DNA from: Bugula neritina
Taxonomy: Eukaryota > Animalia > Bryozoa
Direction of reading: 5' to 3'
DNA length: 64,000 nt
Assembly: GCA_964035545.1 (NCBI GenBank)
Contig: OZ037765.1
Coordinates: 34,930,080-34,994,079 of the forward strand
Numbering within the stretch: the stretch's first letter is position 1; each line of letters starts with the position of its first letter. The notes beneath the pieces were generated by a model. It saw only the letters and a list, made by a program, of their open reading frames with translations. It had not been told where the DNA came from and did not search any database. Below, piece by piece: positions 1,264-55,926 of the stretch. The translations under genes and the position numbers were made by a program.

Positions 1264-1516
1264 ATGGGTCAACGTAAATCTCTACCTCAGCCTACACCTG
1301 CACCTCGAACTCAGCCTACACCTCCACCTAGACCTGCACCTAGACCTACCCCTGCACCTCGAACTCAGCCTACACCTCCACCTAGACCTGCACCTAGACC
1401 TACCCCTGCACCTCGAACTCAGCCTACACCTCCACCTACCCCTGCACCTAGACCTACCCCTGCACCTCAACCTCCACGTACACCTCGAACTCTACCTACA
1501 CCTCGACTTCCACCAA
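1264..1516 (+). CDS. Gene A first coding exon: MGQRKS plus Pro/Thr/Arg-rich stalk (about 3 x 54-nt repeats, PTPAPRTQPTPPPRPAPR)
   Basis: Acceptor ttgttacag at 1211, in-frame stops upstream of ATG 1264, donor A|gttagt (phase 1); homologous exon at 34242-34392. Confidence 0.7.
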
Positions 1517-4500
1517 GTTAGTAAATCAATAACTTATACACAGTGTGTCAAATTAGTTCTGTAAGAAGTTAGTAAACACTGAGTGAGTTTCGGTGATAAG
1601 CAAAGTTTTACAGGGATTTAGCAATTAAAGTTTCTGTCATCTTGCAGACCATTGTCTTTAATCTTCAATCTACTCAAAGAATAATATTTATGGTCTTAGA
1701 GAACCTGAGTCTAGGATTATGTTATGCCAAGCCAGTTATTATGTATAAAGTGGTGCACACTCTGTAGGGCTGAGAACATCTTGCTGGCTATTCTCTTGAG
1801 TGAATGTCTATAATATCTCATGTCCAACCAATCAGCTTGCTTATTAGCCGCTTTCGGCCAATCACAAACTGACTTCTATAACTCAGCTTTCATTAGGAGT
1901 TGCGCTACTTTGTGTGAAAATATTACATTCATATATATAAACTAAGATTAAAATATTATAACATGTTTTACTGGCAAGTGGTACTACATATAATCAGTTG
2001 AAATAACAAATGCATTTGAAATGTATTTTGGAGTTATATACTCTCTCTTGTTTACTTAAACACTGTTTATAGTGTTGAGACACTCTGTTATTTTGATGTC
2101 AAAGTTATTATTTATAAAATAATGAATATTTTGTAGAGAAGTACGAGGTGTGGTTCAACACATCCAGTATAGATGGAGCTGATGATAAGTGGATGAAGAA
2201 TAGGACTACATACTACACTGTAGAAGAGATCAAGAATAAAAGTAGACATCATACAGTGACTCATGTTATACTGAAGCATGACATTCCTCCAAATATCAAC
2301 ACACTGTTTCCTCATATCACACATCTAGTGGTATTTGAAGTATACAGCAATGCTGACTGGACCAGGTATGATATTGTGTCTAACACATGCCGTATAAGAG
2401 AAGAAAATGAGAATTTCTTGTCAATAGTGACTATTCATATACTGCTAGCTAGTATTTAGTGACTATTCATACTGCTAGCTAGTATTTAGTGACTATTCAT
2501 ACTGCTAGCTAATATTTAGTGACTATTCATACTACTAGCTAGTATTTAGTGACTATTCATACTGTTAGCTAGTATTTAGTGACTATTCATACTGCTAGCT
2601 AGTATTTAGTGACTATTCATACTGCTAGCTAGTATTTAGTGACTATTCATACTGCTAGCTAGTATTTAGTGACTATTCATACTGCTAGCTAGTATTGAGG
2701 TTATCTTTAGAGTTATATTTGTTTTTATATCTGTATGTTATGTTACAGCATATCTTTACTGAAGAATCTTGAGGTATTGAATATATCAGATAATAACCTA
2801 TCTGAAGGTCTACCTGACAATATATTCACATCCTTACTATCATTGACAGAGTTGAACATGGAGTACTGTGTACTGTTAACTCTACCAAACAGGTGTGTAT
2901 TATATTATAGTGTAGAATGATACTGTAATATATATATATAATATCTCATCAGTAACTAAGCAACTGTCTGCATACATAGCAAAGGTTTCTACAGTTACAC
3001 TCAGGTTGAGGATATTCTGTTGAGACTAGAGCTAAGCAGTCAGCGTGTAGGAATTTAAGCATTTTCCATGATATTTTTTTAATTGCATTTTTGTTGGGTA
3101 GAAGGGATAGGATTTCTACTTGATAGCTTACCATGTGTACAGTACTATTTCCTGTGTACTCCGAAGGGTGGTTTGCCTTCTTCCATCTATAAGTACAACA
3201 TGTAATTGGTTGTTAAATGCAAACAAGTCTGACCGTTCTACCTGTCAGGGGCATGAAGTGAATATCTTTCAACCATTGGCTGGTGAGTAATATATCTGTG
3301 CATAACACAGATGTTGCAGGATTTAATTAACTTAGCCATATCTCTACACAGGGCTGTCCACCAGAAGTGGTGCTGAGCCCTCACTCTACACTCATATACC
3401 CCCTGATGGCCCTTGTGGCACATTTCTAAATATCCTGACCGTATAAAGACTAGGGAATATACACCCTGGACTTGTACATTAGCATATTATTATAAGCTGG
3501 TAAATAATGTAGGACTGTATAAAGTTGTGTTAGCCCACCTGTCAAACTCCTACCAATTTTTGGCTGTGGAAATTCTAATATACTTCTATACTGAAAGGGT
3601 CTGAGTTTGTAGTTTTTAGTCCTGTTTCTAATATTTATTATCATAGCACTCACTCTAGCACTCAATACCAACCATATAGATCTCAGGCAGATTAGAATGT
3701 TGCTGTCCTCACCATGTAACAGATCTTTCATATCTGTATGTTATGTTACAGCATATCTTCACTGAAGAATCTTGAGGTATTGAATATATCAGGGAATAAC
3801 CTATCTGAAGGTCTACCTGACAATATATTCGCATCCTTACTATCATTGAGAAATTTGAACATGAATCAATGTAGACTACCAACTCTACCAAACAGGTGTG
3901 TATTATATTATAGTGTAGAATGATACTGTAATATATATAATATCTCATCAGTAACTCAGCAACTGCATGTCTGCATACATAGCAAAAGTTTCTACAGTTA
4001 CACTCAGGTTGAGGATAATCTGTTGAGACTAGAGCTAAGCTGTCAGCTTGTCAGCATTTAAGCATTTTCCATGATAATTTTTTAATTCTGTGTATTTCCC
4101 GCCTGCTTTTAGCTGTTAGTCATCAATGAAAGTGACTTGCATTTGTGTTGGTTAGAAGGGATAGGATTTCTACTTGATAGCTTACCATCTGTACAGTACT
4201 ACTAATTCCTGTGTACTCTGAAACTAGGATATTTCAGATCAGCTATCAGATTTACAAATTGTTAGTTGCTACAGAATTTGGGGTTTAGAGTTCAGACAAT
4301 AGTTTGTATACAAACACTGCACCCCACGACCCCAAGCTTTGTGCTGCATTCATCAATTCCCATCAGATTTTATCCTATGCAGTTGGTGGTTGTTGAGTGC
4401 TGATTGGCTGATTTGTTCTACTTGTATCAAGTGCTGCAAGCCTGAATGTTTTCTCTTTTACTGGAAGATCATTTATTCAGTTTAAAAAGTTACGATTATA

Positions 4501-7500
4501 TAAACATGAAGGCTGGTTGCCTTCTTCCATGTATAAGTACAACATATAATTGGTGGTGGAATGCAAACAAGTCTGACCCTCCCACCTGTCAGGGGCTTGA
4601 AGTGAATTTTTCAACCAATGGTTGGTGAGTAATAGCTCTGTGCATAACACGGATGTTGCAGGATTTAATTAACTTAGCCATATCTCTATACAGAGCTGGC
4701 CACTAGAAGTGGTGCTGAGCCCTCACTCTATAACATTCATATACCCCCTGATGGCCCTTGTGACACATTTCTAAATATCCTGACTGTATAAAGACTATGG
4801 AATGTACACCCTGGGCTTGTACATTAGCATATTATTATAAGCTGGTAAATAATGTAGGACTGTAGAAAGCTGTGTTAGCCCACCTGTCAAACTGCTACCA
4901 TTTTTTGGTCGTGCAAAATCTAATACTTTGATACTGATAGAGTCTGAGTTTGTAGCTTTTAGTCTCGTTTCTAATATTTATTATCATAGCACTCACTCTA
5001 GCACTCAATACCAACCATATGAAACTCAGGCAGGTTAGAATGTTGCTGTCCTCACCATGTAACAGATCTTTCATATCTGTATGTTATGTTACAGCATATC
5101 TTCACTGGAGAATCTTGAGGTATTGAATATATCAAGGAATAACCTCTCTAAAGGACTACCTGACAATATATTCACATCCTTACTATCATTGAAAGAGTTG
5201 AATATGATGAGGTGTAAACTGTCAACTCTACCAAACAGGTGTGTATTATATTATAGTGTAGAATGGTACAGTAATATATATATATATAATAACTCATCAG
5301 TAACTCAGCAACTGTCTGCATACATAGCAAAGGTTTCTACAGTTACACTCAAGTTGAGGATATTCTGTTGAGACTAGAGCTAAGCTATCAGCATGTCAGC
5401 ATTTAAGCATTTTCCATGATAATTTTTTAATTATACATGTATTTTTACCTGCTTTTAGCATTTAGTCATTTAGGGAGACGAATGGTATTTGTGTTTGTTA
5501 GAAGGGATAGGATTTTTACTTGATAGCTTACCATGTGTACAGTACTAATTCCTGTGTACTCTGAAGCTAGGATATTTCAGATCAGCTATCAGATTTACAA
5601 GTTGTTAGATGTTACAGAATTTGGGGTTCAGAGTTCAGTCAATATAGTTTGTATACAGACACTGCACCCCACGACCCCAAGCTTTGTGCTGCATTCATCA
5701 ATTCCCATTAGATTTTATCCCATGCAGTTGGTGGTTGTTGAGTGCTGATTGGCTGAGTTGTTCCACTTGTATCACGTGCTGCAAGGCCGAATGTTTTCTC
5801 TTTTACTGGGAGTTCATCTATTCAGTTTAAAAAATTACAATTATAAACATGAAGGATGGTTTGCTTTCTTCCATCTATAAGTACAACATATATTTGGTTT
5901 TTGAATGCAAACAAGTCTGACCCTTCTACCTGTCAGGGGCTTGAAGTGAATATCTTTCAACCATTGGTTGGTGAGTAATTTCTCTGTGCATAACACAGAT
6001 GTTGCAGGATTTAATTAACTTAGCCATATCTCTACACAGGACTAGCCACCAAAAATGGTGCTGAGTCCTCACTCTACACTCATGTACCCCCTGATGGCCT
6101 TTGTGACACATTTCTAAATATCCTGACTGTAAAGACTAGGGAATATACACCCTGGACTTGTACATCAGCATATTAAAAGCTGCTAAATAATGCTGGACTG
6201 TATAAAGCTGTGTTAGCCCACCTGTCAAACTGCTACCACTTTTGGTCGTGCAAAGTCTATTACGCGGTCTGAGTTTGTAGTTTTTAGTCTTGTTTCTAAT
6301 GGAACTCAGGCATATTAGAATGTTGTTGCCCTCACCATGTAACAGATATTTCATACCTGTATGTTGTGTTACAGCATGTCTTCACTGAAGACTCTTGAGG
6401 TATTGAATATATCTGAAGGTCTACCTGAAAATATATTCACATCCTTACCATCATTGAAAAGGTTGTATATGATGGACTATAAACTGTCAACTCTACCAAA
6501 CAGGTGTGTATTATATTATAGTGTAGAATGATACTGTGATATATATAATATCTCATCAGTAACTCAGTTGCGTTTATACCTCTGCTGAAAAAATTTCCGA
6601 GTTTCAGTTAATAACCCTTGTCTGGGTACCCCTTTATAGTCAAACTGAAAATCGTTGAATTCATATTGATGCGGAAGCACACTTTCTAAAATTGAAATCT
6701 GACTATTTGATGCCCTTTGTAAATATTCTGACGGTAAAGACTAGGGAATATACACCCTGGACTTGTACATTAGCATATTATTTTAAGCTGGTAAATAATG
6801 TAGGACTGTATAAAGCTGTGTTAGCCAACCTATCAAACTGCTACCATTTTCGGCTGTGCAAATTCTATTACTTTTGTACTGATAGGGTCTGAGTTGGTAG
6901 TTTTTAGTCCCGTTTCTAATATTTATTATCATAGCACTCACTCTAGCACTCCATACTAACCATATGAAAGTCAGGCAGATTAGAATGTTGCTGTCCTCAC
7001 CATGTAACAGATATTTCATACCTGTATGTTATGTTACAGCATGTCTTCCCTGAAGAATCTTGAGGTATTGGATATATCAGGGAATAACCTATCTGAAGGT
7101 CTACCTGACAATATATTCACATCCTTACTATCATTGAGAGAGTTGTACATGAGATACTGTGAACTGTCAACTCTACCAAACAGGTATGTATTATATTATA
7201 GTGTAGAATGATGCTGTAATATATATAATATCTCATCAGTAACTCAGCAACTGTCTGCATACATAGCAAAGGTTACTACAGTTACACTCAGGTTGAGGAT
7301 ATTCTGTCAACATTTAAAATTATTCAAAGTTATTCTATAAAACTCATTTGTTAACTGGCATTTTGTAACTTAACCAGTTCTCGGTCTATGATTTGTCTAT
7401 ACAAGAAACTGCTTTCTTTGTTTATTAGAGTTATCTTCCCTCTAATATAACCAACTTTGTCACTCACACTTCTGTTATGTCATATTGGACCTCTGCAGCT

Positions 7501-10500
7501 CAAACCAAACTGTCACACAACTTATTTAAAGTTTCTCCAAATTCTCATTTACTACTTGACTACTAACTGACTCCGTTAGTTCTCAGTCTATGATTTACCA
7601 GATCTTAGGCTATAGAATGAGTTCATACCTGTATGTTATGTTACAGCATGTCTTCACTGAAGAATCTTGAGGTATTTAATATATCAGGGAATAACCTATC
7701 TGAAGGTCTACCTGACAATATATTCACATCCTTACTATCATTGAGAGAGTTGTACATGGAGAGCTGTAAACTGCCAACTCTACCAAACAGGTGTGTATTA
7801 TATTATAGTGTAGAATGATACTGTAACATATATAGTATCTCATCAGTAACTCAGCAACTGTCTGTATACATAGCAAAGGTTACTACAGTTACCCTCAGGT
7901 TGCGGATATTCTGTTAAGACTAGAGCTAAACTGTCAGCATTTAAGCCATTTTCCATGATAATTTTATATTTCTGTGTATTTTCCGCCTGCTTTTAACTGT
8001 CAGTCATCAATGAAAGCGACTTGCATTTTTGTTGGTTAGAAGGGATAGGATTTCTACTTGATAGCTTACCATGTGTACAGTACTAATCCCTGTGTACTCT
8101 GAAGCTAGGATATTTCAGATCAGCTATCAGATTTACAAGTTGTTAGAAGCTACAGAATTTGGGGTTTAGAGTTCAGACAATAGTTTGTATACAAACACTG
8201 CACCCCACGACCCCAAGCTTTGTGCTGCATTCATCAATTCCCATCAGATTTTATCCCATGCAGTTGTTGGTTGTTGAGTGCTGATTGGCTGAGTTGTTCC
8301 ACTTGCATCACGTGCTGCAAGGCCGAATGTTTTCTCTTTTACTGGAAGTTCATCTATTCAGTTTAAAAAATTACAATTATAAACACGAAAGGTGATTTGC
8401 CTTCTTCCATCTATAAGTACAACGTATAATTGGTTGTTGAATGCAAACAAGTCTAACCCTCCTACCCGTCAGGGGCTTGAAGTGAATATCTTTCAACCAT
8501 TGGTTGGTGAGTAATACCTCTGTGCATAACACAGATGTTGCAGGATTGAATTAACTTAGCCATCTCTCTACACAGGACTAGCCACCAGAAGTGGTGCTGA
8601 GCCCTCACTCTACATTCATGTACCCCCTGATGGCCCTTGTAGCACATATCTAAATATCCTGACTGTAAAGATTAGGAAATGTACACCCTGGACTTGTACA
8701 TTAGCATATTAATATAAGCTGGTAAATAATGTAGGACTATATAAAGCTGTGTTAGCCCACCTGTCAAACCGCTACCATTTTTCGGTCGTGCAAATTCTAG
8801 TGCTTTTTTACTGAAAGGGTCTGAGTTTGTAGTTTTTAGTCTCGTTTCTAATATTTATTATCATAGCACTCACTCTAGCACTCAATACCAACCATATGAA
8901 ACTCAGGCAGGTTAGAATGTTGCTGTCCTCACCATGTAACAGATCTTTCATACCTGTATGTTATGTTACAGCATGTCTTCACTGAAGAATCTTGAGGTAT
9001 TGAATATATCATGGAGTAGACTATCTAAAGGTCTACCTGACACTATATTCATATCCTTACTATCATTGAGAGAGTTGAACATGAGGAACTGTAGACTGCC
9101 AACTCTACCAAACAGGTGTGTATTATATTATAGTGTAGAATAATACTGTAATATATATAGTATCTCATCAGTAACTCAGCAACTGTCTGCATACATAGCA
9201 AAGGTTTCTACAGTTACACTCAATTTGAGGATATTCTGTTGAGACTAGAGCTAAGCTGTCAGTAATTTCTATGACGTCACAGCTGCCATAAGGCTTTGGT
9301 TTACTGGTCATAAAATAATTTAAGCTTCATCAGTTTATATATTTGAATTTTTAAAAAATTGGCTCAAAGTTTGGGTATCTAACAAATTTTATCTAGCAAA
9401 AATAGAAGCAGAATAGGTGGTAGTGAAATTATCATTGGACGTCAACAATGACTCAACCATGATTTTTTACACTTTCATTCAGCTGGTAGAATTGAAAATA
9501 AAATTGTTTTCTTTTATGTTCAAGACAAGACAACTGCATAGAAAGGAGTAGTTTTTTAGTCAATTCCATGGAAGAGTAGTGATTTGCACATTTGACAAAG
9601 TTACGTTAGCAGATTTAACTGAATACTGGTATTCATTTTCACCCTTACTTTTGCAAGTTATGTAGATAATACCAAATCTACTTCTAATTAGTCAAGTATT
9701 AGATACTATCCCCAGCTGCAGGCTAGCTATACAATAACTATTTGCAGTGTGCAGCAATATATATATCATTTGGTATAAACAGAAATGATTAGTAAGGTAT
9801 GATTATTAGATTGTGTAAACAATGCATAGAATATACTGTGATATCTGGTAACAACATTTACCAGATGACAACTAAATATATATTTCTATATCAACAAACC
9901 CTGCCTTTGTTTGAACTCTCTATTATTTGTGATGTTTACCAAAGCAGTTCATTCAAAGGTCAAGGACACATTGTTTAACTATAATATATAACTATTTTAT
10001 AACTTTCTATATTACCCAATAATGTAATGAATATATTTGCAATGTTAACTTCTAGACATTATCATTCAACAAAGAGGGTGCTCTTATTTCTGCATGAAGT
10101 CAAATTTTTGATATAAAAGTTATCATGTGATAGTAAAGATGCTTCAACTTGTACTGACAGTGTATAGTGTTCTGTTTACTAGCATACAGAGTCTACAGAA
10201 GTTAGAGGAGCTGGACATATCAGGTAATACCTTCACGAGTTTACCATCTCCTGTGTGCACACTGAGTAGTCTGCAGAAACTGGATATATCCTTCAACCAC
10301 TCCCTGACATCCTTAAATCCTGAGATACTACAGCTAACTCAACTTCATACACTGTATTTAGATCATTGTAATGCTCTCACATCTCCTCCACTAGAAGTAT
10401 GTAAGAGAGGAGTAGATGATGTGAGACAATACTACACAGACTTGGCTAAAGGTGCTGGTAGAAGTCTTCCATTTGCTACTATAGCTGTACTGGGTAATAT

Positions 10501-13500
10501 GATGGCTGGGAAGACCAGTCTAATCAGAACATTACAGAATGCTGACAGAAAGAGAGTTCTGACCAACAGAGGGCCAGATGCTGTGAGAGATGAGACAACA
10601 AAGGTGTTTAATGTTGAAGAAGTGGAGGTGGATGGTACAGTACTCCGTGTCATCGATATGGGAGGCCAGGAGGTCTACCATATCACCTATCAACTGACAC
10701 TGAGACAGAATTGTATTCCAGTCATAGTAGTCAACATGGAACAGTATGAGGAGATCTCAAGTGATTCAACACACAGAGAAGCTGTTAGAAGATTAGCCTT
10801 TGATTACATGTCTCACCTCTACCTGGCTAACCCAACTCTTGGTGCCCCAAAACTTATCTTCACACATAAAGATAAGTTTCAAAGTGCAGAATTCCAAAAG
10901 CTTCAAAAAAATTTCCTTGGAACTTCAAATCAACTGTGTGAGGAGATGATCAGGGAAGAGAAAGCATTGGGTGGACAATTTGCTCAAATCAAACATTTCA
11001 GTGAATCAACTGAAAGAGTCTTTCTTGATGAGGACATTTATGAGGTGGGGAAAGATGATAGGTATGAAGTGTTTGACCAGATCAAGGAGTCTCTTCTTCA
11101 AACCAGTCAACATTTTGTGAAATCTTTACCTCTGGTTTGGGAGGAAGTGAATGAAAAAGTGCTGTCTATTCCCTCTGTGTACAGCACCTTTGATGAGATA
11201 CTGAAATACTTACAAACCGAACTTCAAACCATTGAGTCAAGTCAGCTGGACATCATCCTCACATACATGCATGACTGTGGCAAAGTCTTGTGGTATAAAG
11301 ATATCAGCTCTCTCCAGCCATACGTATTCCATAAGATTTCACAAGTCACCAAACTTCTCTGTGTTTTGTATCATCATGATCCTAACATATGGCAGAGTAG
11401 AGTTGACAAGTTCCAGCCATATTTTTCAGAGGATGGGATGTCTGTTGAAAAAGAAGACTTTGAGAGATTTGTTAATCATTTCACTGAGACTGGTTTGATG
11501 ATGCAATGCCTTCTCACTCATCTGGTTAAACAAGAAACATCATTTACCAGTCTGGAAGACGTAGAAGTTGCTGTGTGCTTGCTTCGCACATTCCGTCTGT
11601 TATATGGTCCTTTACCTGGTGATTCCAAGGAGCCCTGTTTTATTGTTCCCCAGTTTGCTAACGACTTCTTTGATACCTCTTACTCTTCGCCAAAGAATAT
11701 GCTCCTTCGAGTTGAAACTAAATTCAATGGTCTAGCCCTGCCACACTATGTCTATCAGCAGATGAGTGTTGGTTTGTTGGAGTTGTTTCCAGACGAGTTT
11801 GCTGTGGTTAAAGTGAGAAGAAATGGAGCCAATGTCTATCAAGATGGTATCTACACACAGCTGGTACACGACTTTACATCTAGAAAAGTGTCACTCCACG
11901 TGTCATCTACTGCTGCCAACATCAGCAGAATGTGGGAGAGACTCATCACCACCAACAACAACATCCTCAGACATGTCCTAGAAACTTGGACAGCAAGTAG
12001 ACCAGTCACTACATGCTACTGTGCTCACTGTCTTCTGCTAGGACTTCCTTGTCCTAAGAAGGTGATCAATCCTCCGTGGTGTCTTCGCTCTTTGAAACAT
12101 TCCACACCACGTCCCGGACTGTGTAGTGGATCTTCAACAACTCTGTGTGGTTATGAGGAGATACCGAGTGCTCTTCTCTATCCATGTATGTTTGCATTCA
12201 GTTTGAAGTGAATATCTAGTTTTGCTCGCTTTCATCAGTCTTTCTACTATTTATGTTCTGATAGTAATAAACATATAACTTCCATGTGGTAACTGACAAT
12301 GTTTTATTCTCCAGGCAGCCCTCTTTCTTCAGAAGAAGCTGATAACATAAAAAAACGCGTCACCAAACTGAGATCTGCAAGAGAAGAGACTGCTTCAACT
12401 GTCCCTGGTATGATCAGTTTTCTATCATAAACTGTTACTGTTAGAAGTGACATCCTCTGCCTGAGCTCAGTCATATGTAAACAGCAATAGACAAGAACTC
12501 ATTACACTCAGTTATATAGGACAAAATCACTCAGCTTCAATTATTAAATTTGATCTATATAATTACTGATTAAAAGTGGAAAATATGATTCTGTTCCTTG
12601 TTTACAGTTATTTGGATAATTAGTATCTGTTACTTAGCACTGAACATATCTCCTTTTTTGTTTATTTTAGGAATAGGTGAAGATGATAACCTCAGTGAAT
12701 GCTCTGATGTAGAAGAGGAAGGATATGCTGATTTTACTAAAGATGACCTTGAACCTTTTATATTTATGGTTGATGGCATGCAACTGAAACCTACCAACAG
12801 TGAAAGAGTTAAACAGAAGTTTGACAACTACCAGCAGGTAAAACAAATAATATTGTCTCTGACTATTTCCTAAATCATTGAATATTTTTTCAAAAATATT
12901 GGGTTACATCACATAATTTCTAAAAATGTGATTGTTATTCTATTTATCCACTTTTAGTAAGATAAAATTGATTGGTTTACAGGTTTATGCAATGAGTGAC
13001 CCTGTGAGAGGTCGTGTCATGATCATAAACAATGAGAGATTCTTTAGAGATGATGGCAGTGAATTGACTGAGGCAACCCGAGATGGTTCATACATCGACT
13101 ATGTTAACATCAAAACTCTGTTGAAAGACATGGGATTTGTTGTAGCCAATGAAGATGATCCTCTGTTTGACCTGAGTAAACAGGTTACTGTATCAACCTC
13201 TTATCTTTTTGTGTAGTTCCTTCTCCCTAGGGCCTATAGACTGTCACTAGCTATCAAATACTATCCAGTACAGAGATGTATTGTAGTCCAAGAAGTCTAC
13301 ACCGTGTTTACCATGGTGTTCAAATTAATAGTTTTATAATTTTACAATTATAGTGCGTGGGTTTTATTGTGCGTAGCAGGTATCCTCTTCTAGTTAAGCA
13401 ATCACTCGGGTAGTAGCCGGATAATAGTCTTAATTATTTAACTCAAACACAATACAAAACATCACTCTAAATTACAATACAACAATAGCCATATAATACA

Positions 13501-21303: not shown

Positions 21304-21687
21304 TGTTGCAGTTTTGAACTTGTGGGGTTTACCAGTGTGTATTGTCAATTAGCACATTAGCTCCAATCTAATCAATCTCACAAAGTAGTAGCCGAGTATT
21401 AGAACATTATATTTATAAAGTTAAGTACAAAAGAAAAACATTACAATTATTATCAATTTACAGTAGTACACATTCACGATACGTGCTTTCAACTCGATTC
21501 CTTGCTCACAACAACAACTAGTCGCAGGAACTCTCACTAATTGTTATCCTGACCTCAAACTGTTCCTATTGGATAGTTCATCTTGATCAGATCACCTCCA
21601 CGTGCATGATGATTGCAGAATTCTTTAGAACGGGGAAACAACACTTTCCCCTTTTATATTATATAGGTGACGTCACAAACCACCACA
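21304..21687 (-). repeat. 3' LTR of element 1
   Basis: Direct repeat of 32726-33108; adjacent G-rich PPT on minus strand (21688-21700). Confidence 0.95.
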
Positions 21688-32724: not shown

Positions 32725-32725
32725 C

Positions 32726-46200: not shown

Positions 46201-49200
46201 GGATGCCTGTTGAAAAAGAAGACTTTGAGAGATTTGTTAATCATTTCACCAAGACTGGTTTGATGATGCAATGCCTTCTCACTCATCTGGTTAAACAAGA
46301 AACACCATTTACTGGTCTGGAAGACGTAGAAGTTGCTGTTTGCTTGCTCCTCACATTCCGTTTGTTATATGGTCCTTTACCTGGTGATTCCAAGGAGCCC
46401 TGTTTTATTGTTCCTCAGTTTGCTAGCGACCTCTTTGATACCTCTCACTCCTCACCAAAAAAAATGCTCCTTCGAGTTGAAACTACATTCAATGGTCTAG
46501 CCCTGCCACACTATGCCTACCACCAGATGAGTGTTGGTTTGTTAGAGTTGTTTCCTGATGAGTTTGCTGTGATTAAAGTGAGAAGAAATGGAGCCAATGT
46601 ATATCAAGATGGAATCTACACACAGCTGGTACACGACTACAAATCTAGAAAGGTGTCACTCTACGTATCATCTAATGTCGCGAACATCAGCAGAATGTGG
46701 GAGAGACTCATCACCAACAACAACAATATCCTTAGACATGTTCTACAAACTTGGACAGCAAGTAGACCAGTCACTACATGCTACTGTGCTCACTGTCTTC
46801 TGCTAGGACTTCCTTGCCCTAAGAAAGTGCAACGACCTCCTTGGTGTCTTCGTTCTTTGAAACTTTCCACACCAAGTACCAGACTGTGTAGTGGATCTTC
46901 AACAACTCTGTGTGGTGATGAGGAGGTTCCAAGTGCTCTGCTCTACCCATGTATGTTTATTTGCATTGTGGTGTGGTGCCTGTAAAATTATATTTTACTG
47001 CAATTCACCAAATGTGTGCATTTATTTGGAAAGGAATTATTCATTGATATAACTAGGATAATAGTGTGATTTCACGACACCCGACTGTATTTACAAGCAA
47101 TTCATTGTTTCAGGTGAACCACTGTCTGAACGAGAAGCTGATAAGTTGGAAATGTTTGTGAAGGAACTGAATATTCGAGGAGCTCAAGAAAGATCAGCTA
47201 ATTCTGGTGAATACAATGTTACCAGTCTTTACAAGCTTGTGTTCCTTAAAAGTTTTATTTTAATAAAAATTCTTCTCGCAAGAAATTCCTGCATTGCATC
47301 TAAATACCAAACTGCTAGCTATCATAGTACTATGTTTTTTACTTATTCCCTGTGTTGCTAAGTATTGTAGTCAGTTTATACTTTATAGTCGCCAACAGTA
47401 GCCAATCAGATCTCCTGACCACCACAATAACAGCCAATGACGATCTCAGTGATCTCTCTGATGATGAGGAGAATCTGTACCCTGATGGAAAGGAAGTTGA
47501 AGATATGAAGTTTATAAGACTCAGACTGAATCCCACCAGTAACCCAAAGATAAGACAGCTGTTCTCAAACACTGACAAGGTGATCACTTCTCATGTCTAT
47601 GTCTATTCTTGCCAGTTGTTTAGTTCAGTAGTAACAAATATTTCTCTGTTACATCCAGGTGTTTACCATGACTAGAAAAAGAGGAAGAGCTCTGATAATA
47701 AACAACATGAACTTTGATAAGAGACCAGACTTGTATAGGAAAGGTTCAGATGTGGATGTTGAGAATATGTCTGCCATGTTGAAATCTCTCAAGTTTGATG
47801 TTGTGACACACACAGACTTGAAGGCTGAGGTATGTTTTATTAGGAATATTAAATACAATATTTCATTTTGATTTACTGTTTAAAAGTTATCTAAAAACAG
47901 TTAAATTCCTAAAAGCACTTTTATTAGTTGTAGCAACTTTTCCAAATTTTGATAAAACTTCTGCCATGTGATCTACAATATTTGTAGGAAATGATGTCTG
48001 CTGTAAAATCTGAGGTGACAAAAGAGGAACACGGAGATCTGGGGTGTCATGTGTTGGTTATCATGACTCATGGAGGGCTAAACAACCACATCTATGGTAC
48101 AGACCTGAAACGAGTGAAACTAACAGATGTGTATGACCTTCTGACCCCTTTGAACTTCCCAGGAATGGCTGGTAAACCAAAGGTTGTTATACTGGAAGTC
48201 TGTAGTGGAGGTAATTATTTGCTACAGGAAAATGAATACTGTTCTTGTTTACACAGTCTCGTTTTAGATGACATTATTCAGATATTTATATAGTACATCA
48301 AGTGAAATTACTATTGTAGTAGAAATTTAGGTAAATATTATCCTTTAGCACTGTTGGTGGTAGATTGTCCCCTCCTGTATTCTATGTTATATTCCATCGA
48401 TATATATATTTTATATTATACTAATATTTTAACACTATAATTAGAAGTTAGTTTATAACCGTGATATAAGATATTAGTTGATCTCCAAAGGGTAGTATTG
48501 TTGTGAAATTATGCTTCACTGCAATCAATGGGTCTATTTAATGAAAGCCACTACACCAGGTTTTACTAATTGCTAAGAGTGTATTTACTTCAAATTACGG
48601 CATAAAAGAATAACAAGTCCAACATAAAACGATTACATAATTGAGAGCTCACTACACACAACTGTACATTAACAAGTCCAAGTCCTCTCTGCCGGTTACA
48701 CTGCCTAACCGGCTTCCACTACAGTTTGCAGCTACGCCCACTAATTAGCATGTCAGTCCTCCTTGATTGGCCAAGACAATCAGGCCATTCTAGTAGCATG
48801 ACACCAGCAGCATCCTCAACTGTCGGGGAGAAGTATCCTTTCGATACAAATACAAAATACTAATAATCTACTAATAATACAATTAATAATACAATTACCA
48901 CACTATGAAAAACCCTTACACTCTCCCTTCCTATCGAAAGGTACTTTACAAAAAAAACAAGTAAAAAGAAATATAAAACAATACAAGGGTAACACAATCA
49001 GAATAAATATCACGTACACTTTAAAACATCGAGAGCAATTAACAGCTCGCCAGCAGGGTTTGATGTGTCTCTTCGCCAGATCATGTAGGGGAACACGAAT
49101 ATAGGAAAAGGGGTTGTGCGTTCACACATCTGGTCCTGTAGTCCTGGATGCAACCACACGAAGGGGGGTTTAGGAACACGCTCATATAGTCAGAGCCAAG

Positions 49201-52200
49201 CACGCATCTCGCCGACGCCGGTGGTCCAGAAGTACAAGCATGGCAAAGGAAAATTCCCCTAAGAAAAGGGGGGGGATCGTCACTATTTCTTTCCTCATAG
49301 GGTAGTGTCGAGCGCCAGCAGTCCATGCTGATTAGTCGGTCGAAATACCGAAGGGGGGGGGTATGGAGTTCGTCCTCAGGCTATTTTTCTTCCGTCTATT
49401 ATTATGATTGTTATTATTATAGTCCATCCTTGTATCGAGATGTAGTTACTTTCATGCAGTATTATATATTGTTGAGCAAGGTCTCGCCACAAAAATGGTT
49501 TTGGTACCGACTGAGAAGAAGTTTTAACAAATCTCTCACTTTTATTAATTTTCTTCTAAATCGTAAAAACTACAAGTAACATAAAGAATACATATAGGTG
49601 TGCTAAAACTCATACAATACAGTTGTTCAAATACCAGCAAACATCACGATATAATATTAAAATATAACAGCAATAAAAATTGTAATAAAAGACATAAAGC
49701 ATTATCAAGTTAAAAATAGCAAAGAATAATAATAAAATACCTTTATTCTCTTGACGAGCTTGCTATAATATCTTCAAAATTTAGCTCTTTGTCACTTAAC
49801 TTAACAAAATAAGTAGCTCAGCTTAGGCTACATGAGTGACTGTCTTTTTGGAGTTTCAATGCTGCCTTAAATACCAGGGCAATCACAAAGAAAAGGTAAT
49901 TACATCTAAATTTAGCTATAATTAGGGTCAGCTAACTATGGGGCACATGTAATGACCTCATAAAGGAAGATGGATCAGTTCCTGTCAAACCCTAAAAGCT
50001 GACTTCAACAAAGGTGGCGGTTAGGCTTTACCTATTATTAGGCAGCTGACTGCTGCACAGGAGAATGAACTATCTAATAATAACAAATATCACCATTAAA
50101 AGCTAAAAATAAAAGTTCTAGTGGTATTTGTAACAAGGGCTATCATGCTTCTTTGTTAGATCCTTTACATATATTACTAATAAATTATTCTATTAATTTA
50201 CGGTTATGTTTATTACTGTCATTACGATTACGATTCGCCTCCTTCAGTACCAATGTAACGTGATCGAGCCACGGGCGAGAAAAGGGAAGAACTCCTATTG
50301 TCTTTTGTTGGTTACTACTGCTCATCATGGGGGTCGTAGGGCACCATCCGCCACGACAGTCACCAAGTCTGCTGTGCAGTCAAGCCAAGCAGTCAAGTCA
50401 AGCTAAGCAGCCGTAGTGTGAGTCAGCACCATGAGCACACGAATGCCAAGAGTCAGTGAACATGCAGATGAGAATGATGGGTGACTGCGTGACGGTGGTG
50501 CCAGGAGAAAGAAGTGCCCGCTCCACTATTAAAGTCTCACCTGCAACAGAATGCCGGAAACTGTTGAAGGGGTTTCACCTGGTCAGTACGACATCTCGAC
50601 TGAGTCTCGCAATCTGGCAACCCACTGATTCTTAACAAATCACGCGGGCGACTGCCTCACTCAAAGTCGTCAGTGAAATTACCTGACTTAGAAAACCAGC
50701 CTTGTCGTTATGATAAAGCTAGACTGATTTTAAGCTACCAGCTTGAATTTTATTTAAATAATAGAATTATACTAGTAGACTTACCATAGGGCAGCCACGA
50801 CGTTAGTCTGCTGCCCACTTAGACCTCGTAGTTTGCCAGCTTGCCAAGTGCGTGCTCGCACGTTGGCAGTTGAAATAGAAGAGAACGCTCTTTGCAGTGA
50901 AAGTGATTACATCACACCCCCTTCCACTAGCAAGCTGGCTTCGCTCTTTTCTATACCCCCAGTAATGTTATTATGATATATATTTACACCACTGGGTAGG
51001 CAACTCACAGTTGTGTCTCCTTGTACTTCGGAAATGCAACTCTCAGTTGCTTATCTCCCCAGATTTTTTTTTATTATAGCTGATGGATGTTTTTCCACTG
51101 CATCACACAATAAATCTTTTAAATAAGATGGAGGCGCCCTAGTGCGTTGCTCAAACTGCCCTGGGGAATTTGCTGCTGCTAGTGACTCTTCCACCACGGG
51201 TGGTGTCGCCAGTACGGGGGGTCCACCAGTACGGGTGGTCCCCTCTCAGCTGCCTCTTCCTCATGAATTTGAGGAAATGCCATCTCATCCGGGACGACAG
51301 GGGTGTTGGCTGGCTCCACTGGTGGTGGGGCCGGCTCGGACCGGACTTCCGGTGTGTCGGCCTCCCCCTCCTGGGGTGGAGGTGGCCGGGGCGGGTCGGG
51401 CGGCGCGTCGGTAGCCCCCTCCTGACCTGGCAGTATCTCCTCTATCTCTCTGTATGCCATGCCTCGCCCCCTCATAGGAGGGCGTCTAGCGGGCTCTAAG
51501 AGAGGAGGTGCTTGACCTGCTGCATCAGGGCTCGTCCAGTAAGGTTTCAGCCGTGCTTCGTTCTGGACCGACACTTGTCCAGACCGTTCCACTTTGTAGG
51601 TGTGATTGGGCATCACCTCAATCACGCAATAAGGACCCACGAAATTCGGCTGCAACTTAGCCGCCTGTCCGCGCCGCTGGCAATGACTGGTCATCAAGAC
51701 CCAGTCTCCCACCTTGTACAAAGGGGGAGTCGTCAGAGTCACCACTCCTGACCTGCCACTGCTGCTCACGTAGCACTTCGTGAGCCGTCCTCATGCGTTT
51801 TACGAGCTCATCCACATAATCATGGACGCTGCTTTCTGGAGCCGGAACGTGGTAAGTTACGTGCTCAGAAACCCTCGTTTCTCTCCCCAACATGAGAAAT
51901 TTAGAGGTCTCCAGTGTACTGGAGTGAGGTGTACTATGGTACGCTCGCATGATTTGCGGCAGTACCAAGTCCCACTCTTCCTGGCTCTTACCGATAAGCA
52001 TGCTTCTCAGTGAGACCCTAGCATTCGGTTGTTCCTCTCCACAACCCCATTCCCTTGCGGGTGATACGGAGTTGTCCGACTCTGGTTTACCCCCCACGTT
52101 TGACAAAGATCGCTCATAAGTTGTGACTGAAACTGGGTGCCTTGATCAGAGCTTTTTTTCGGCAAGCCAAAATAACAGAACACCTGCTGATCCAAGGCTC

Positions 52201-55200
52201 TGGCCACCGTGGGGGCCGACGCGTCTGGAATAGCCAGCGCATCAGCCCACCGCGTGAAATGGTCAGTTAACACCAGTATCCAGTTATTACCTCTCACTGT
52301 CGTGGGCATGGGGCCTACCAGATCTACAGCGACTACCTGCCACAAACGACCGGCATAGAGGCGGTGCCTCCCTGCGGTCTCAGTGGAGCGGCCATGCTTG
52401 CTAGCTTGGCATATCTCACACTTCCGCACCCGGAGTCGGACATCCCGGGTCATACCGGGCCAAAACCACTGGAGTTGAAGACGCCCAGTCACCCGCCCAG
52501 CTCCTGCATGAGCCTGCTTATGGGTGTCCCAGATCAACTCCAGCTTCAGAGCAGACGGACAGACTACCCTCTCTCGTTCTTGGCCATTGATGCCGGCTGC
52601 TAACGTTATCGTTAACAAACCATCATCATTAAACCGGAGGGAGTCCCAGCGGTCATAGAAATATTTAAACTCCGCAAACTTAACACTATTTTATTATTGT
52701 AGTAACTGTTTCATGTTGGGATGAGGCAGTTTTAAACTAACTACTGTTGTGTTACAATAGATATAAACTAACGTTAGCATTGGATATAGATTGAGTATGA
52801 ATAGGACCTGTTTTATGTTACAGAGAGGAGGAGTATAGGACTAGTTTTATGTTACAGAAAAGAGTATAGTATAGGGCTAGTTTTATGTTACAGAGAGTAG
52901 TATAGGGCTAGTTTTATGTTACAGAGAGGAGTATAGTATAGGGATAGTTTTATGTTACAGAGAGGTGTAGTATAGGGCTAGTTTTATGTTACAGAGAAGT
53001 GTAGTATAGGGCTAGTTTTATGTTACAGAGAGTAGTAGTACAGGACTAGTTTTATGTTACAGAGAGTAGTAGTACAGGACTAGTTTTATGTTACAGAGAG
53101 TAGTATAGGGCTAGTTTTATGTTACAGAGAGGAGTATAGTATAGGGATAGTTTTATGTTACAGAGAGGTGTAGTATAGGGCTAGTTTTATGTTACAGAGA
53201 AGTGTAGTATAGGGCTAGTTTTATGTTACAGAGAGTAGTAGTACAGGACTAGTTTTATGTTACAGAGAGGAGTATAGGGCTAGTTTTATGTTACAGAGAG
53301 TAGTATAGTATAGGACTAGTTTTATGTTACAGAGAGGAGTATAGTATAGGGCTAGTTTTATGTTACAGAGAGTAGTATAGGGATAGTTTTATGTTACAGA
53401 GAGTAGTATAGTATAGGACTAGTTTTATGTTACAGAGAGGAGTATAGTATAGGGCTAGTTTTATGTTACAGAGAGTAGTATAGTATAGGACTAGTTTTAT
53501 GTTACAGAGAGGAGTATAGTATAGGACTAGTTTTATGTTACAGAGAGGACTATAGTATAGGACTAGTTTTATGTTACAGAGAGTAGTATAGTATAGGACT
53601 AGTTTTATGTTACAGAAAAGAGTATAGTATAGGACTAGTTTTATGTTACAGAGAGTAGTATAGTATAGGACTAGTTTTATGTTACAGAGAGGAGTATAGT
53701 ATAGGACTAGTTTTATGTTACAGAGAGGACTATAGTATAGGGCTAGTTTTATGTTACAGAGAGGAGTATAGTATAGGACTAGTTTTATGTTACAGAGAGT
53801 AGTATAGTATAGGACTAGTTTTATGTTACAGAGAGGACTATAGTATAGGGCTAGTTTTATGTTACAGAGAGTAGTATAGTATAGGGCTAGTTTTGTGTTA
53901 CAGAGAGTAGTATAGTATAGGGCATATGATGAAGATATAAACCGACTACTCATATATATGCATCGTATGCTATCTTCAATCCTTATATTATTATCGGAAA
54001 AATTTAAAAAATGTTGCCTTCTATTATTACACTTTGAAACTATAAGCTGTTTCAAAATTAGAGATTAAATGCAAAACTAGATGTTTTTGAGTTGATTTAC
54101 TTATCATATCAAATGAATATAAAGTTTGATGTCTGTATTACAGAGAGGAGTGATTATGGCCAAAGAGGTATAGACAGATTTGATATCGGAGAATCACAGA
54201 AGGAGGGGGAGAGTATCTCACCTCCACTTGCTAAAGTTCCTGGAGACAAAAAAGCTGAGGCTATGAATAGACTGAACTATGATGACCTGCTAGTAGTGAA
54301 ATCTAGCATGGAGTGTAAGTAACACACATGTAATACTTGATATTATACTGTGTATAATATACTGTGTGTACTATACTGTGTGTAATATACTGTGTGTAAT
54401 ATACTGTGTGTAATATACTGTGTGTAATATACTGTGTGTATTATACTGTGTGTAATATACTGTGTGTGATATACTGTGTGTAATATACTGTGTGTAATAT
54501 ACAGTAATATACAGTGTGTAATATACTGTGTGTATTATACTGTGTGTAATATACTGTGTGTAATATACTGTGTGTAATATACTGTGTGTAATATACTGTG
54601 TGTAATATACTGTGTGTAATATACTGTGTGTATTATACTGTGTGTAATATACTGTGTGTAATATACTGTGTGTAATATACTGTGTGTAATATACTGTGTG
54701 TAATATACTGTGTGTAATATACTGTGTGTAATATACTGTGTGTAATATACTGTGTGTAATATACAGTGTGTAATATACTGTGTGTAATATTCTGTGTGTA
54801 ATATACTGTGTAGTAATATACTGTGTGTAATATACTGTGTGTAATATACTGTGTGTAATATACTGTGTGTAATATACAGTGTGTAATATACTGTGTGTAA
54901 TATACTGTGTGTAATATACTTTGTGTAATATACTGTGTGTAATATACTGTGTGTAATATACTGTGTGTAATATACTGTGTGTAATATACTGTGTGTAATA
55001 TACTGTGTGTAATATACTGTGTGTAATATACTGTGTGTAATATACTGTGTGTAATATACTGTGTGTAATATACTGTGTGTAATATACAGTGTGTAATATA
55101 CTGTGTGTAATATACTGTGTGTAATATACTGTGTGTAGTATACTGTGTTATACTGTGTGTAATATACTGTGTGTAATATACTGTGTGTAATATACTGTGT

Positions 55201-55926
55201 GTAATATACAGTGTGTAATATACTGTGTGTAATATACTGTGTGTAATATACTGTGTGTAATATACTGTGTGTAATATACAGTGTGTAATATACTGTGTGT
55301 TTTCTTGTAGCATTCATAGCAAAGGTTCATCCAGTATATGGATCTCTAATGATTAGAGCTCTTGTATCCTCCATGTATAAACATGCCTGTCACCATGACC
55401 TCTACACTATATTCAAACAGGTGAGTATAACTTTACTAAATTAGTTGCCTATTGTTAGGATTATAAACACTAAGAAATGCTGTAGCAAGTAGTAATGAAA
55501 ATATCCTGTATTTTGTTTCATGTGATAAGAAACTGTCATATAAAGCTACAAGTCTCTACCTTTACAACTTTCAACCAAACTAACTCTGCTTTCCAACTAA
55601 AATGATATTTTATTCGCTACAGGGACAACCACTGTGTCTGTTGCTTCAAATATCATAAACTTTTATCATGTGACAAGTTTAATTGGCTGAATATGAAAAT
55701 GTTATATTGGGCAGACTTCGAGATTAGTAATTGCATTATTTCACCATCCTCTGTAAACATTCTATAAACTGTTCTTCAGGTACAGACTAAAGTGAGAAAA
55801 CTTTGCTTAGATAAAAATCTAGAGAGTGGAGGACAGTTGGTTGTAGTCTGGGATACTCTCACTCATATGAGACAACTTTACCTGTTTCCTAGGTTTAATG
55901 GCCACAAAAGAGAAGATGACTTCTAA
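34242..55926 (+). CDS. Gene B: LRR-ROC-COR-caspase paralog, 1306 aa. Exons 34242-34392, 34920-35148, 42314-42457, 42919-43062, 43738-43881, 44948-46950, 47114-47206, 47389-47579, 47659-47829, 47988-48210, 54144-54314, 55311-55420, 55780-55926
   Basis: All junctions GT-AG and phase-compatible; summed CDS 3921 nt, open to TAA at 55924-55926; exon sizes 229, 144, 2003, 93, 223, 110 identical to gene A; motifs [34 protein letters not shown]. Confidence 0.82.
35310..36305. repeat. 30-bp intronic minisatellite, about 33 copies
   Basis: Same unit and same intron position as 2427-2697. Confidence 0.95.
36305..36375 (+). pseudogene. Remnant 3' end of a deleted LRR cassette exon (donor kept, acceptor lost)
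   Basis: tgtaaactgtgaattctaccaaacag|gtatgtattatattatagtgtagaatgatactg fused directly to the minisatellite. Confidence 0.85.
36378..41787 (-). mobile_element. 5'-truncated Ty3/gypsy element 2 inside the gene B LRR-array intron
   Basis: 3' LTR about 36378-36762 with PPT; RT, RNase H, integrase ORFs 38571-41787 with stops; no gag or 5' LTR; joins cassette-intron sequence at acaa microhomology (41784-41787). Confidence 0.92.
37078..38517 (-). CDS. Element 2 accessory 3' ORF: acidic N-region, two C2H2-like fingers, C-terminal basic/coiled-coil segment
   Basis: Open frame directly after the pol stop, first ATG 38517; [25 protein letters not shown]...[34 protein letters not shown]. Confidence 0.75.
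   Translation of the reverse strand: MADRILEDIRSRELSFRNPVEIPTGHATRALAGNNSEARGSAISSSDFTQLARQLQLKLNSDPDTPKFDLNTVLQTLSAAMRITLPDTQSGISFRLDPPVTESSQTSVDWSLLDLLGSDYLEPEAEMDLGDDCVIDTLLNHDVGSVNFCDTPWPPVFNLAPYTPMPNFGDSETGLSQPLLSVLEERMDTEEASQSDSPFPPAPASASHSQQDVTSSTEVCSAIVSGPDPKPVELQLTAGKEQGILHGDHLAAEEDDSPILALPRVLVARQYWVTGPTNLRIGEACGEPGNRICHQCQRKFSSARRLRVHAPQHYINLLCPCGKISYQRDYVLRHQRIAHCHTSYTFAVDQASFPEFWDLVLPHVADPHKRAALALGFPVCRPVREEEGEPAATPQPAATQPLRVVLARVGSGARTDSSDLGPRPSAAGEKQRRRTSHSTTDRPRHQTSAQLEEKVQHLRRRLRRYEEELGQLRRRVSCL
42314..42457 (+). CDS. Gene B LRR cassette exon B1
   Basis: 144 nt, phase 2-2; ...DISWNN...[16 protein letters not shown]. Confidence 0.9.
42919..43062 (+). CDS. Gene B LRR cassette exon B2
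   Basis: 144 nt, phase 2-2; ...DISGNK...[16 protein letters not shown]. Confidence 0.9.
43738..43881 (+). CDS. Gene B LRR cassette exon B3
   Basis: 144 nt, phase 2-2; ...DISLNK...[16 protein letters not shown]. Confidence 0.9.
44948..46950 (+). CDS. Gene B large exon: 3 LRRs + ROC GTPase + COR
   Basis: 2003-nt exon in ORF 44892-46985, ungapped paralog of 10183-12185. Confidence 0.92.
47659..55926 (+). CDS. Gene B caspase-like domain over 5 exons
   Basis: [74 protein letters not shown]. Confidence 0.85.
48499..52680 (-). mobile_element. 5'-truncated Ty3/gypsy element 3 in a gene B caspase intron
   Basis: 3' LTR about 48499-48920 (TG...CA) with PPT ggaagggagag; frameshifted integrase 51179-52618 ([20 protein letters not shown]). 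Confidence 0.88.
52800..53923. repeat. 31-36-bp minisatellite (ttttatgttacagagagKagtatagtataggRctag), about 32 copies
   Basis: Tandem units seen directly; source of spurious ORF 53363-54055. Confidence 0.95.
54343..55300. repeat. 14-bp minisatellite (taatatactgtgtg) filling almost an entire gene B intron
   Basis: Tandem units between donor 54315 and acceptor 55310. Confidence 0.97.

What the first reader, a model, noticed from the sequence alone, without database searches (positions are those of the whole stretch)
1264..55926. Tandem ROCO-caspase genes: LRR sensor, ROC-COR switch and caspase effector in one chain
Seen: two genes splice in frame from LRR cassettes through ROC-COR into a complete caspase keeping both catalytic residues (MSHG/HACSG in A, MTHG/EVCSG in B). 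Established: ROCO proteins (LRRK1/2, DAPK1, MFHAS1) pair ROC-COR with kinase or death domains or no enzyme; COR mediates dimerisation; initiator caspases activate by induced dimerisation. Inference: ligand binding to the LRR could drive nucleotide-dependent COR dimerisation and directly fire the caspase. That would be a single-chain, GTPase-gated analogue of an NLR inflammasome needing no adaptor. I do not know of this architecture being characterised.
Basis: partly seen in the sequence, partly recalled or inferred. Interest (0 to 1): 0.95.

Follow-up and report, generated by a model that had tools for sequence, protein, structure and literature searches.

The report
Bryozoan Roco GTPases with swappable caspases
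Two neighbouring genes of a moss animal (bryozoan) each join a variable leucine-rich-repeat surface, an LRRK2-like GTPase switch and a cell-death protease (caspase) in one protein; they share the front half but carry different proteases, and the design has been glimpsed in amphioxus, an annelid and bacteria but, in the papers I could search, never tested.

Summary
Observation confirmed. Gene A (1264-15056, 17 exons, 1543 aa) and gene B (34242-55926, 13 exons, 1306 aa) splice GT-AG without stops from LRR through Roc-COR into a complete caspase with His and Cys. RNA-run contigs show the junctions, though the Roc-COR junction contigs fit close paralogues or alleles, and no full-length molecule was seen. 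Watersipora RefSeq proteins share the architecture.

It is not unprecedented. Amphioxus has at least 12 LRR-Roc-COR-caspase proteins; papers report amphioxus LRR-caspases (2008), an Owenia ROC-caspase (2024) and bacterial LRR-Roc-COR-caspases (2021). None of those papers tested one. This scan found the family repeatedly on other DNA of this genome.

What this locus adds: A and B share Roc-COR (89%) but not caspase (38%), the break lies just after the Roc-COR donor, and trees show an effector swap (AU p=3e-8). B's aspartate pocket is altered (Gln283Glu, Arg341Val). Concave LRR sites show pN/pS about 3.

Best reading: a modular one-chain danger receptor whose Roc-COR dimerisation fires the caspase; all of that mechanism is inferred. 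New variant of a known kind.

The parts
1264..15056 (+). Gene A, 17 coding exons, 1543 aa: Pro-rich N-terminus, LRR cap, 7 LRR cassettes, LRR-Roc-COR exon, linker, caspase (A type)
   Evidence: frames, GT-AG; Pfam; junctions
1264..1516 (+). A exon 1, Pro/Thr/Arg-rich repeat N-terminus
2137..2365 (+). A exon 2, N-terminal cap of the LRR solenoid (inferred; no Pfam match)
   Evidence: a contig joins an exon-2-like end to an LRR cassette
2749..9115 (+). Seven symmetric phase-2 LRR cassette exons (144 nt, two LRRs each; one of 129 nt): 2749-2892, 3752-3895, 5095-5238, 6375-6503, 7040-7183, 7647-7790, 8972-9115
10183..12185 (+). A 2003-nt exon: last three LRRs, Roc (P-loop 10493-10516), COR-A, COR-B, C-terminal Cys-rich end
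12186..12314 (+). Intron that holds the break in A/B similarity (identity falls from about 90% to background within about 10 nt of the donor); AATAAA at 12266
12315..12837 (+). A linker exons 12315-12407 and 12671-12837 (helix, acidic Ser/Asp stretch)
   Evidence: relative modelled
12983..15056 (+). A caspase exons 12983-13183 (Arg179 equivalent 13079), 13852-14074 (His 13933, Cys 14065, HACSG), 14336-14536 (inter-subunit linker), 14701-14810 (Arg341 equivalent 14715), 14898-15056
34242..55926 (+). Gene B, 13 coding exons, 1306 aa: same front half with 3 intact LRR cassettes, different caspase (B type)
34242..35148 (+). B exons 1 (34242-34392) and 2 (34920-35148)
36305..36331 (+). Remnant of a first LRR cassette of B (3' end and donor only), behind an expanded 30-bp minisatellite (35312-36305)
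42314..43881 (+). B LRR cassettes 42314-42457, 42919-43062, 43738-43881
44948..46950 (+). B LRR-Roc-COR exon, 89% amino-acid identical to A's (P-loop 45258-45281)
47114..47579 (+). B linker exons 47114-47206 and 47389-47579
47659..55926 (+). B caspase exons 47659-47829, 47988-48210 (His 48069, Cys 48201, EVCSG), 54144-54314, 55311-55420 (Val at the Arg341 position, 55325), 55780-55926

Best explanation
Both genes encode cytosolic one-chain danger or pathogen receptors of an expanded bryozoan LRR-Roc-COR-caspase family. Shown: one reading frame from LRR to caspase; intact GTPase motifs and catalytic dyad; selection to conserve both enzymes and to vary the LRR face; recombination in the intron after Roc-COR that pairs one front half with different caspases. 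Inferred: a ligand on the LRR changes the Roc nucleotide state; by analogy with CtRoco the GTP form is a monomer with an idle caspase, and hydrolysis or nucleotide loss gives the COR-mediated dimer; this brings two tethered caspases together on a flexible acidic linker, and they activate by induced proximity as initiator caspases do, with Roc-COR in place of a CARD prodomain and its adaptor platform. A's caspase probably still cuts after Asp; B's has a changed pocket and probably other substrates or a modulating role.
For: Intact spliced frames and RNA-contig junctions. Same architecture in Watersipora RefSeq proteins on several chromosomes. Roc-COR and caspase folds confirmed by model and fold search; the linker and inter-subunit loop are low-confidence, as expected of flexible tethers. 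pN/pS 0.12-0.24 in caspase halves and 0.22-0.30 in Roc-COR. Concave LRR positions pN 0.286 against pS 0.092, other positions pN 0.049 against pS 0.10; column permutation p 4e-5, as in brown-algal ROCO LRR exons (PMC11378527). The bryozoan caspase clade includes a Watersipora CARD-caspase and lies beside CARD caspases. Roc-COR and caspase trees conflict, AU p=3e-8. In amphioxus one Roc-COR clade carries caspase, GT4 glycosyltransferase, OTU or Death domains in the same slot, the pattern of the bacterial counter-invader systems (PMC8195603).
Against: No ligand, dimer, GTPase activity, protease activity or infection-induced expression was tested. No single transcript spans LRR to caspase; the runs are only guessed to be RNA, and the junction contigs come from close relatives of the two genes. 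The pN/pS figures are pairwise counts on 9 related cassettes, not a likelihood test. LRRK2 and CtRoco differ in how they dimerise, so the direction of the switch is borrowed. HACSG and EVCSG depart from QACxG.
Confidence: 0.58

Rival explanations
1. Same fused receptor, but activation is by release of autoinhibition: the LRR-Roc-COR acts as a long inhibitory prodomain, GTP binding opens it (the large LRR-Roc hinge movement of CtRoco), and the caspase is freed or cut off at the acidic linker and dimerises on its own.
For: CtRoco's GTP state is an open monomer called active (PMC11052575). An acidic Asp/Ser motif in the linker is conserved across bryozoan members and could be a self-cleavage site. 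Stand-alone caspases nest inside the fused clade.
Against: Initiator caspases are activated by dimerisation rather than by prodomain removal (established knowledge). The model shows no confident caspase-to-Roc-COR packing (pTM 0.70), though a monomer model cannot exclude it.
Confidence: 0.17
2. The family serves self/non-self recognition between colonies, control of the bacterial symbiont, or the programmed degeneration of zooids (brown-body cycle), and not pathogen defence.
For: Variable LRR faces and effector swapping are also marks of allorecognition loci, such as fungal NLR-like HET genes (own knowledge). Bryozoans are colonial and recycle polypides (own knowledge). Contigs come from four studies with no infection on record.
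Against: No tissue or stage data here; solitary amphioxus has the same design.
Confidence: 0.15
3. Gene B, and B-type genes generally, are catalytically weak decoys or dampers (cFLIP-like) that heterodimerise with A through the shared Roc-COR. This can hold alongside the best explanation.
For: B has Glu for Gln283 and Val for Arg341 (pocket defined in PMC2064784). All five B-type genes have Glu; three of the five lack Arg341. An 89% identical Roc-COR would allow A/B heterodimers.
Against: His, Cys and Arg179 are kept in all B-type genes and pN/pS is 0.24; L006 and L007 keep Arg341.
Confidence: 0.2
4. Two separate genes or an assembly artefact: LRR-Roc-COR messages end in the intron (AATAAA at 12266, in-frame stop at 12209-12211) and the caspase exons are a separate gene.
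For: A possible poly(A) signal in A's intron; some Watersipora models lack the caspase (P0033, P0037, P0038); stand-alone caspases of the same clade exist.
Against: Junction contigs of both types; the same exon order in eight independent loci; full-length fused RefSeq models in Watersipora and Bugula; the linker exons are phase 1 with no start of their own.
Confidence: 0.05

Closest known systems
Amphioxus LRR-caspase 'shortcut' genes (Zhang et al. 2008, PMC2575513) and the database proteins C3XQ16 / XP_002614028.1 and relatives
   Same: LRR-Roc-COR-A-COR-B-caspase in one chain; at least 12 proteins in three Branchiostoma species and two hybrids; proposed in 2008 as direct links from recognition to apoptosis.
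   Different: The paper names only LRRs and caspase, not Roc-COR, and I could not confirm that its models are these proteins (figure not held). Amphioxus caspases keep QACRG. Roc-COR and caspase fall in other clades in the best trees, but a single origin is not rejected (AU p 0.086 and 0.27).
Bacterial LRR-AP-GTPase(Roc)-COR-effector counter-invader systems (Kaur et al. 2021, PMC8195603)
   Same: Fast-evolving LRR, Roc-COR, interchangeable C-terminal effector including caspase; several paralogues per genome with different effectors.
   Different: Predicted, not tested. The bryozoan protease is a metazoan caspase (closest solved relatives of a Watersipora member are CED-3, caspase-9, caspase-8), the genes have introns, and bryozoan Roc-CORs do not nest among the bacterial rows of the tree.
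Owenia fusiformis ROC-prodomain caspase (Krasovec et al. 2024, PMC11463336); CAH1786849.1, and Lingula XP_013407220.1
   Same: Roc-COR followed by a caspase related to CARD caspases in a lophotrochozoan.
   Different: No LRR (the Owenia protein has a Bcl-2 domain); a separate Roc-COR lineage; reported as a single gene; bryozoans were not sampled in that paper.
MFHAS1/MASL1-like LRR-Roc-COR proteins
   Same: LRR-Roc-COR without kinase; RefSeq names many Watersipora relatives 'MFHAS1 homolog'.
   Different: MFHAS1 has no C-terminal enzyme (own knowledge); orthology was not shown; no vertebrate MFHAS1 was in my trees.
Brown-algal LRR-ROCO genes (PMC11378527)
   Same: Symmetric phase-2 LRR cassette exons, tandemly duplicated, with diversifying selection on the concave face.
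   Different: 72-nt one-repeat exons and no effector domain there; 144-nt two-repeat exons and a caspase here.
NLR inflammasome / Apaf-1 apoptosome with initiator caspases
   Same: Repeat sensor, nucleotide switch and proximity-activated caspase (works-like comparison).
   Different: Switch is a Roc GTPase, not a STAND ATPase; dimer rather than ring; no CARD, PYD or adaptor; all in one chain.

Membership tests
ROCO proteins | Roc GTPase domain with G1, G2, G3, G4 motifs | tested here: met
   Pfam Roc 30.5 and 33.3 bits, cut-off 27; GxxxxGKT, Thr, DxGG, THKD invariant or nearly so in 51 relatives
ROCO proteins | COR domain directly after Roc | tested here: met
   Pfam COR-A below cut-off, but the model matches Roc-COR of LRRK1, CtRoco, LRRK2 and the isolated COR of 3dpt
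ROCO proteins | GTP binding and hydrolysis, nucleotide-dependent dimer | not testable with these tools
   monomer models only; analogy to PMC5714945
Caspases (clan CD, C14A) | Caspase fold with p20 and p10 | tested here: met
   Pfam C14 on window exons; model of Watersipora relative P0075 matches caspase-3, -6, -8, -9 and CED-3, target TM 0.81-0.90
Caspases (clan CD, C14A) | His-Cys catalytic dyad | tested here: met
   SHG/ACSG in A, THG/VCSG in B
Caspases (clan CD, C14A) | Asp-binding pocket Arg179, Gln283, Arg341 in gene A | tested here: inconclusive
   Arg, His, Arg: two of three kept
Caspases (clan CD, C14A) | Asp-binding pocket Arg179, Gln283, Arg341 in gene B | tested here: not met
   Arg, Glu, Val; Val aligns with caspase-1 residue 341
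Caspases (clan CD, C14A) | Cleavage after Asp; activation by dimerisation | not testable with these tools
   needs enzyme assays
NLR / STAND receptors | NACHT or NB-ARC ATPase | tested here: not met
   only Roc and small-GTPase families match; works like an NLR, is not one
LRRK / DAPK ROCO kinases | Kinase domain | tested here: not met
   none in either model or in Watersipora relatives
Amphioxus LRR-Roc-COR-caspase family | Common origin of the fusion | tested here: inconclusive
   separate clades in best trees; AU p 0.27 and 0.086
Bacterial LRR-AP-GTPase-COR-effector systems | Descent from bacterial Roc-COR with a prokaryotic caspase-like effector | tested here: not met
   metazoan caspase; Roc-COR outside the bacterial rows (quick tree, long branches)
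Variable immune receptors | Diversifying selection on the binding face, multigene family | tested here: met
   pN/pS about 3.1 on concave sites against 0.5 elsewhere; about 30 Roc-COR exon clusters from JGI assemblies, six traced to one bryozoan-labelled sample
Variable immune receptors | Binds a non-self ligand and triggers defence | not testable with these tools
   no ligand or infection data

The most novel reading that the evidence does not exclude
Animals have a hidden, modular receptor class parallel to NLRs: LRR-Roc-COR chains with a swappable effector slot, filled independently with caspases in bryozoans, amphioxus and Owenia/Lingula. The Roc nucleotide state directly gates proteolysis, and bryozoans recombine sensors with caspases of different specificity, including a non-Asp type (gene B).
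Probability: 0.35. Interest if true: 0.85.

Novelty: new variant of a known kind. Interest (0 to 1): 0.58.

Why it matters
If the mechanism holds, this is an animal cell-death receptor that uses a Roco GTPase where inflammasomes and apoptosomes use a STAND ATPase and adaptors. It would also give a direct protease read-out for a disputed question in the LRRK2 field: whether the GTP monomer or the GDP dimer of Roc-COR is the signalling state. This locus offers a natural experiment, nearly the same switch with two different caspases, one with an altered pocket. Limits: the architecture is already in databases and in three papers as a prediction, and this scan has reported the family on many other pieces of the genome.

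Tried and rejected
The search for related loci in metagenome contigs found nothing; loci came from the look-up of encoding contigs. A PDB search with B's catalytic exon at E 1e-8 gave no hit, the exon being short. Tests for separate origins of the bryozoan and amphioxus fusions did not reach significance, so convergence is only suggested. Transfer from bacteria is not supported. Pseudogene status rejected: no stops, canonical splice sites, purifying selection. Read depth was not used to compare exons, since contigs cannot rank them and paralogues pile on the Roc-COR exon. Nine paper searches found no description of the bryozoan family; the library lacks most subscription papers, including Huang et al. 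2008 on amphioxus immunity and the Marin ROCO surveys, so absence is not proof. The full-length structure is therefore of a Watersipora relative (P0075), not of gene A or B. No contig looked human.
Full report
Source. The window is AT-rich, intron-containing animal DNA with gypsy-type elements. The closest relatives of the Roc-COR exon are JGI contigs from samples labelled AY690838 (from memory, the Bugula neritina mitochondrial accession) at up to 90% nucleotide identity, then RefSeq proteins of the bryozoan Watersipora subatra at 33-38% amino-acid identity. A Bugula neritina protein of the same design is in GenBank (KAF6038145.1). The source is a cheilostome bryozoan, probably B. neritina.

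Observation. I built both genes exon by exon. Gene A has 17 exons (1264-15056, 1543 aa) and gene B 13 (34242-55926, 1306 aa); every intron is GT-AG and neither frame has an internal stop. The order is a proline-rich start, an LRR cap, symmetric 144-nt phase-2 LRR cassettes (7 in A, 3 intact in B), one 2003-nt exon with the last LRRs, Roc and COR, two linker exons and five caspase exons. Pfam gives LRR, Roc and Peptidase_C14; COR-A is under its cut-off, but the predicted structure of A's exon (pLDDT 89.5) matches LRRK1, CtRoco and LRRK2 along its length. A full-length Watersipora relative folds into Roc-COR plus a complete caspase, joined by a low-confidence linker.

Splicing. No run is on record as RNA, but several are guessed to be. 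Contigs of four such runs from four studies lie on exons and skip introns at the predicted GT-AG sites, from the last LRR cassette to the last caspase exon. In run X8, three contigs carry the end of the Roc-COR exon in front of A's first linker exon, and two carry a B-type linker exon behind the Roc-COR exon. The A-type junction matches paralogues L001 and L005 exactly and gene A at 19 of 21; the B-type junction matches gene B at 28 of 30. So the fusion is shown junction by junction for the family, not as one molecule and not for these exact alleles. Eight further loci show the same exon order, and Watersipora has fused RefSeq models on several chromosomes (XP_067941160.1, XP_067937032.1, XP_067947674.1, XP_067948342.1 and others).

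What this locus adds: an effector swap. A and B are about 90% identical in DNA, introns included, from upstream of exon 1 to about ten bases past the Roc-COR donor, and have no detectable DNA similarity after it. The Roc-COR exons are 89% identical in protein, the C-terminal halves 38%. In the Roc-COR tree A, B, L001 and L005 form one clade (98/99), with L002, L006, L007 and L008 outside. In the caspase tree A, L001 and L005 group with Watersipora P0047 and P0075 (97/97), while B groups with L002, L006, L007 and L008 (99/98); holding the four Roc-COR sisters together is rejected, AU p=3e-8. At least one recombination in the intron after COR has therefore exchanged effectors. Synonymous distance between A and B in Roc-COR (0.18) is lower than from either to L001 (0.25), which suggests that B's front half came from the A lineage; the four-way node is unresolved, so direction is not settled. 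Both caspase types share intron positions and phases, which makes such swaps frame-safe.

Enzymes. Roc motifs G1 to G4 are conserved across 51 relatives. Both caspases keep His and Cys and evolve under purifying selection (pN/pS 0.12-0.24). The aspartate pocket of caspases is Arg179, Gln283 and Arg341 (PMC2064784). A has Arg, His, Arg. B has Arg, Glu, Val, the Val aligning with residue 341 of caspase-1. All B-type genes have the Glu; L006 and L007 keep the second Arg. Watersipora members mostly have QACSG and both arginines. I infer Asp specificity for A and altered specificity or weak activity for B.

Sensor. Across nine cassettes the solvent-facing strand positions have pN 0.286 and pS 0.092; the rest have pN 0.049 and pS 0.10; variability is concentrated there (permutation p 4e-5). 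These are pairwise counts on related sequences, so they indicate rather than prove positive selection. The pattern parallels brown-algal ROCO genes, with 72-nt phase-2 LRR exons under diversifying selection (PMC11378527).

Mechanism. Shown: one chain, intact enzymes, variable LRR face, swappable effector. Inferred: ligand on the LRR shifts the Roc nucleotide state and the COR dimer brings two caspases together. CtRoco is dimeric when GDP-bound or empty and monomeric with GTP (PMC5714945; PMC11052575), so the resting state in a GTP-rich cell would be an idle monomer and hydrolysis or nucleotide loss would fire it. The bryozoan caspase clade includes a CARD-caspase and lies beside CARD caspases, which fits Roc-COR replacing an initiator prodomain. 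Rivals are release from autoinhibition, a role in allorecognition or zooid turnover, a decoy role for B, and (unlikely) two separate genes.

Comparison with what is known. A profile search of 1.84 billion proteins found the design outside bryozoans: LRR-Roc-COR-caspase in Branchiostoma floridae (C3XQ16), Bcl-2-Roc-COR-caspase in Owenia and Roc-COR-caspase in Lingula. Amphioxus has at least 12 such proteins, and the same Roc-COR clade also carries GT4 glycosyltransferase, OTU or Death domains. In print: amphioxus LRR-caspase genes proposed as direct links from recognition to apoptosis (PMC2575513); a ROC-prodomain caspase in Owenia (PMC11463336); bacterial LRR-AP-GTPase-COR proteins with at least 24 effectors including caspase (PMC8195603). 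The passages I read report no functional test of these proteins, and I found no paper on the bryozoan family. Best trees place bryozoan, amphioxus and Owenia/Lingula fusions in separate clades, but a common origin with amphioxus is not rejected.

Earlier notes of this scan report the same family on many other pieces of this genome, with counts of 50 to more than 100 genes, and first-reader notes on this window mention the cassettes and the similarity break. I did not test the counts. The break, the amphioxus relatives and the papers were found here independently.

Verdict. Real, intact, spliced genes; members of the ROCO family and of the caspase fold family, not NLRs; a new variant of a known but untested kind. 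Interest 0.58.

Noticed in passing
window 21304-33108: Gypsy-like LTR element between genes A and B; LTRs 21304-21687 and 32726-33108 (93% identical), 4-bp target duplication CTTT, broken pol pieces on the minus strand.
   Followed up: partly
window 25925-29418: A 3.5-kb insert nested in that element with 884-bp inverted ends, 97% identical; probably a recent non-autonomous DNA transposon or foldback element.
   Followed up: no
window 36373-41780, about 51490-52650, 58850-64000: Related gypsy pol remnants inside two introns of gene B (antisense) and downstream of it, 69-80% alike.
   Followed up: partly
window 35312-36331: A 30-bp minisatellite has 33 copies in B against 9 in A and abuts the remnant of B's first LRR cassette, which lost its acceptor and 5' part.
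   Followed up: partly
window 12266: AATAAA in the intron after A's Roc-COR exon, 55 nt behind an in-frame stop: possible caspase-less isoform that could act as a dominant damper.
   Followed up: no
window 6375-6503: One LRR cassette has an in-frame 15-nt deletion that removes the Asn ladder of its first repeat.
   Followed up: no
window 19012-19128 and 19365-19500: An inverted copy (73%) of A's last exon end and 3' UTR, and a direct copy of the stop-codon region a little further on.
   Followed up: no
RNA contigs laid on 14076 and 14709-14898: Loose ends show a further A-like paralogue with a different inter-subunit linker exon, not present in the window or fetched loci.
   Followed up: partly
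protein P0171 (Owenia CAH1786849.1): Bcl-2 domain, Roc-COR and caspase in one predicted chain; the Bcl-2 part is not mentioned in the passages of PMC11463336 that I read and may be a gene-model join.
   Followed up: no
proteins P0222-P0280 (Branchiostoma): Large amphioxus LRR-Roc-COR family with caspase, GT4-conflict, OTU, Death or trypsin-like C-termini, an animal counterpart of the bacterial system.
   Followed up: partly
protein P0219 (Bugula neritina KAF6038145.1): LRR-caspase with a degenerate Roc lacking the P-loop lysine motif: a possible pseudo-GTPase member.
   Followed up: no
L003:7366-7368: This copy of the L002 gene lacks part of the catalytic p20 exon and shifts frame; allele or assembly error.
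   Followed up: no
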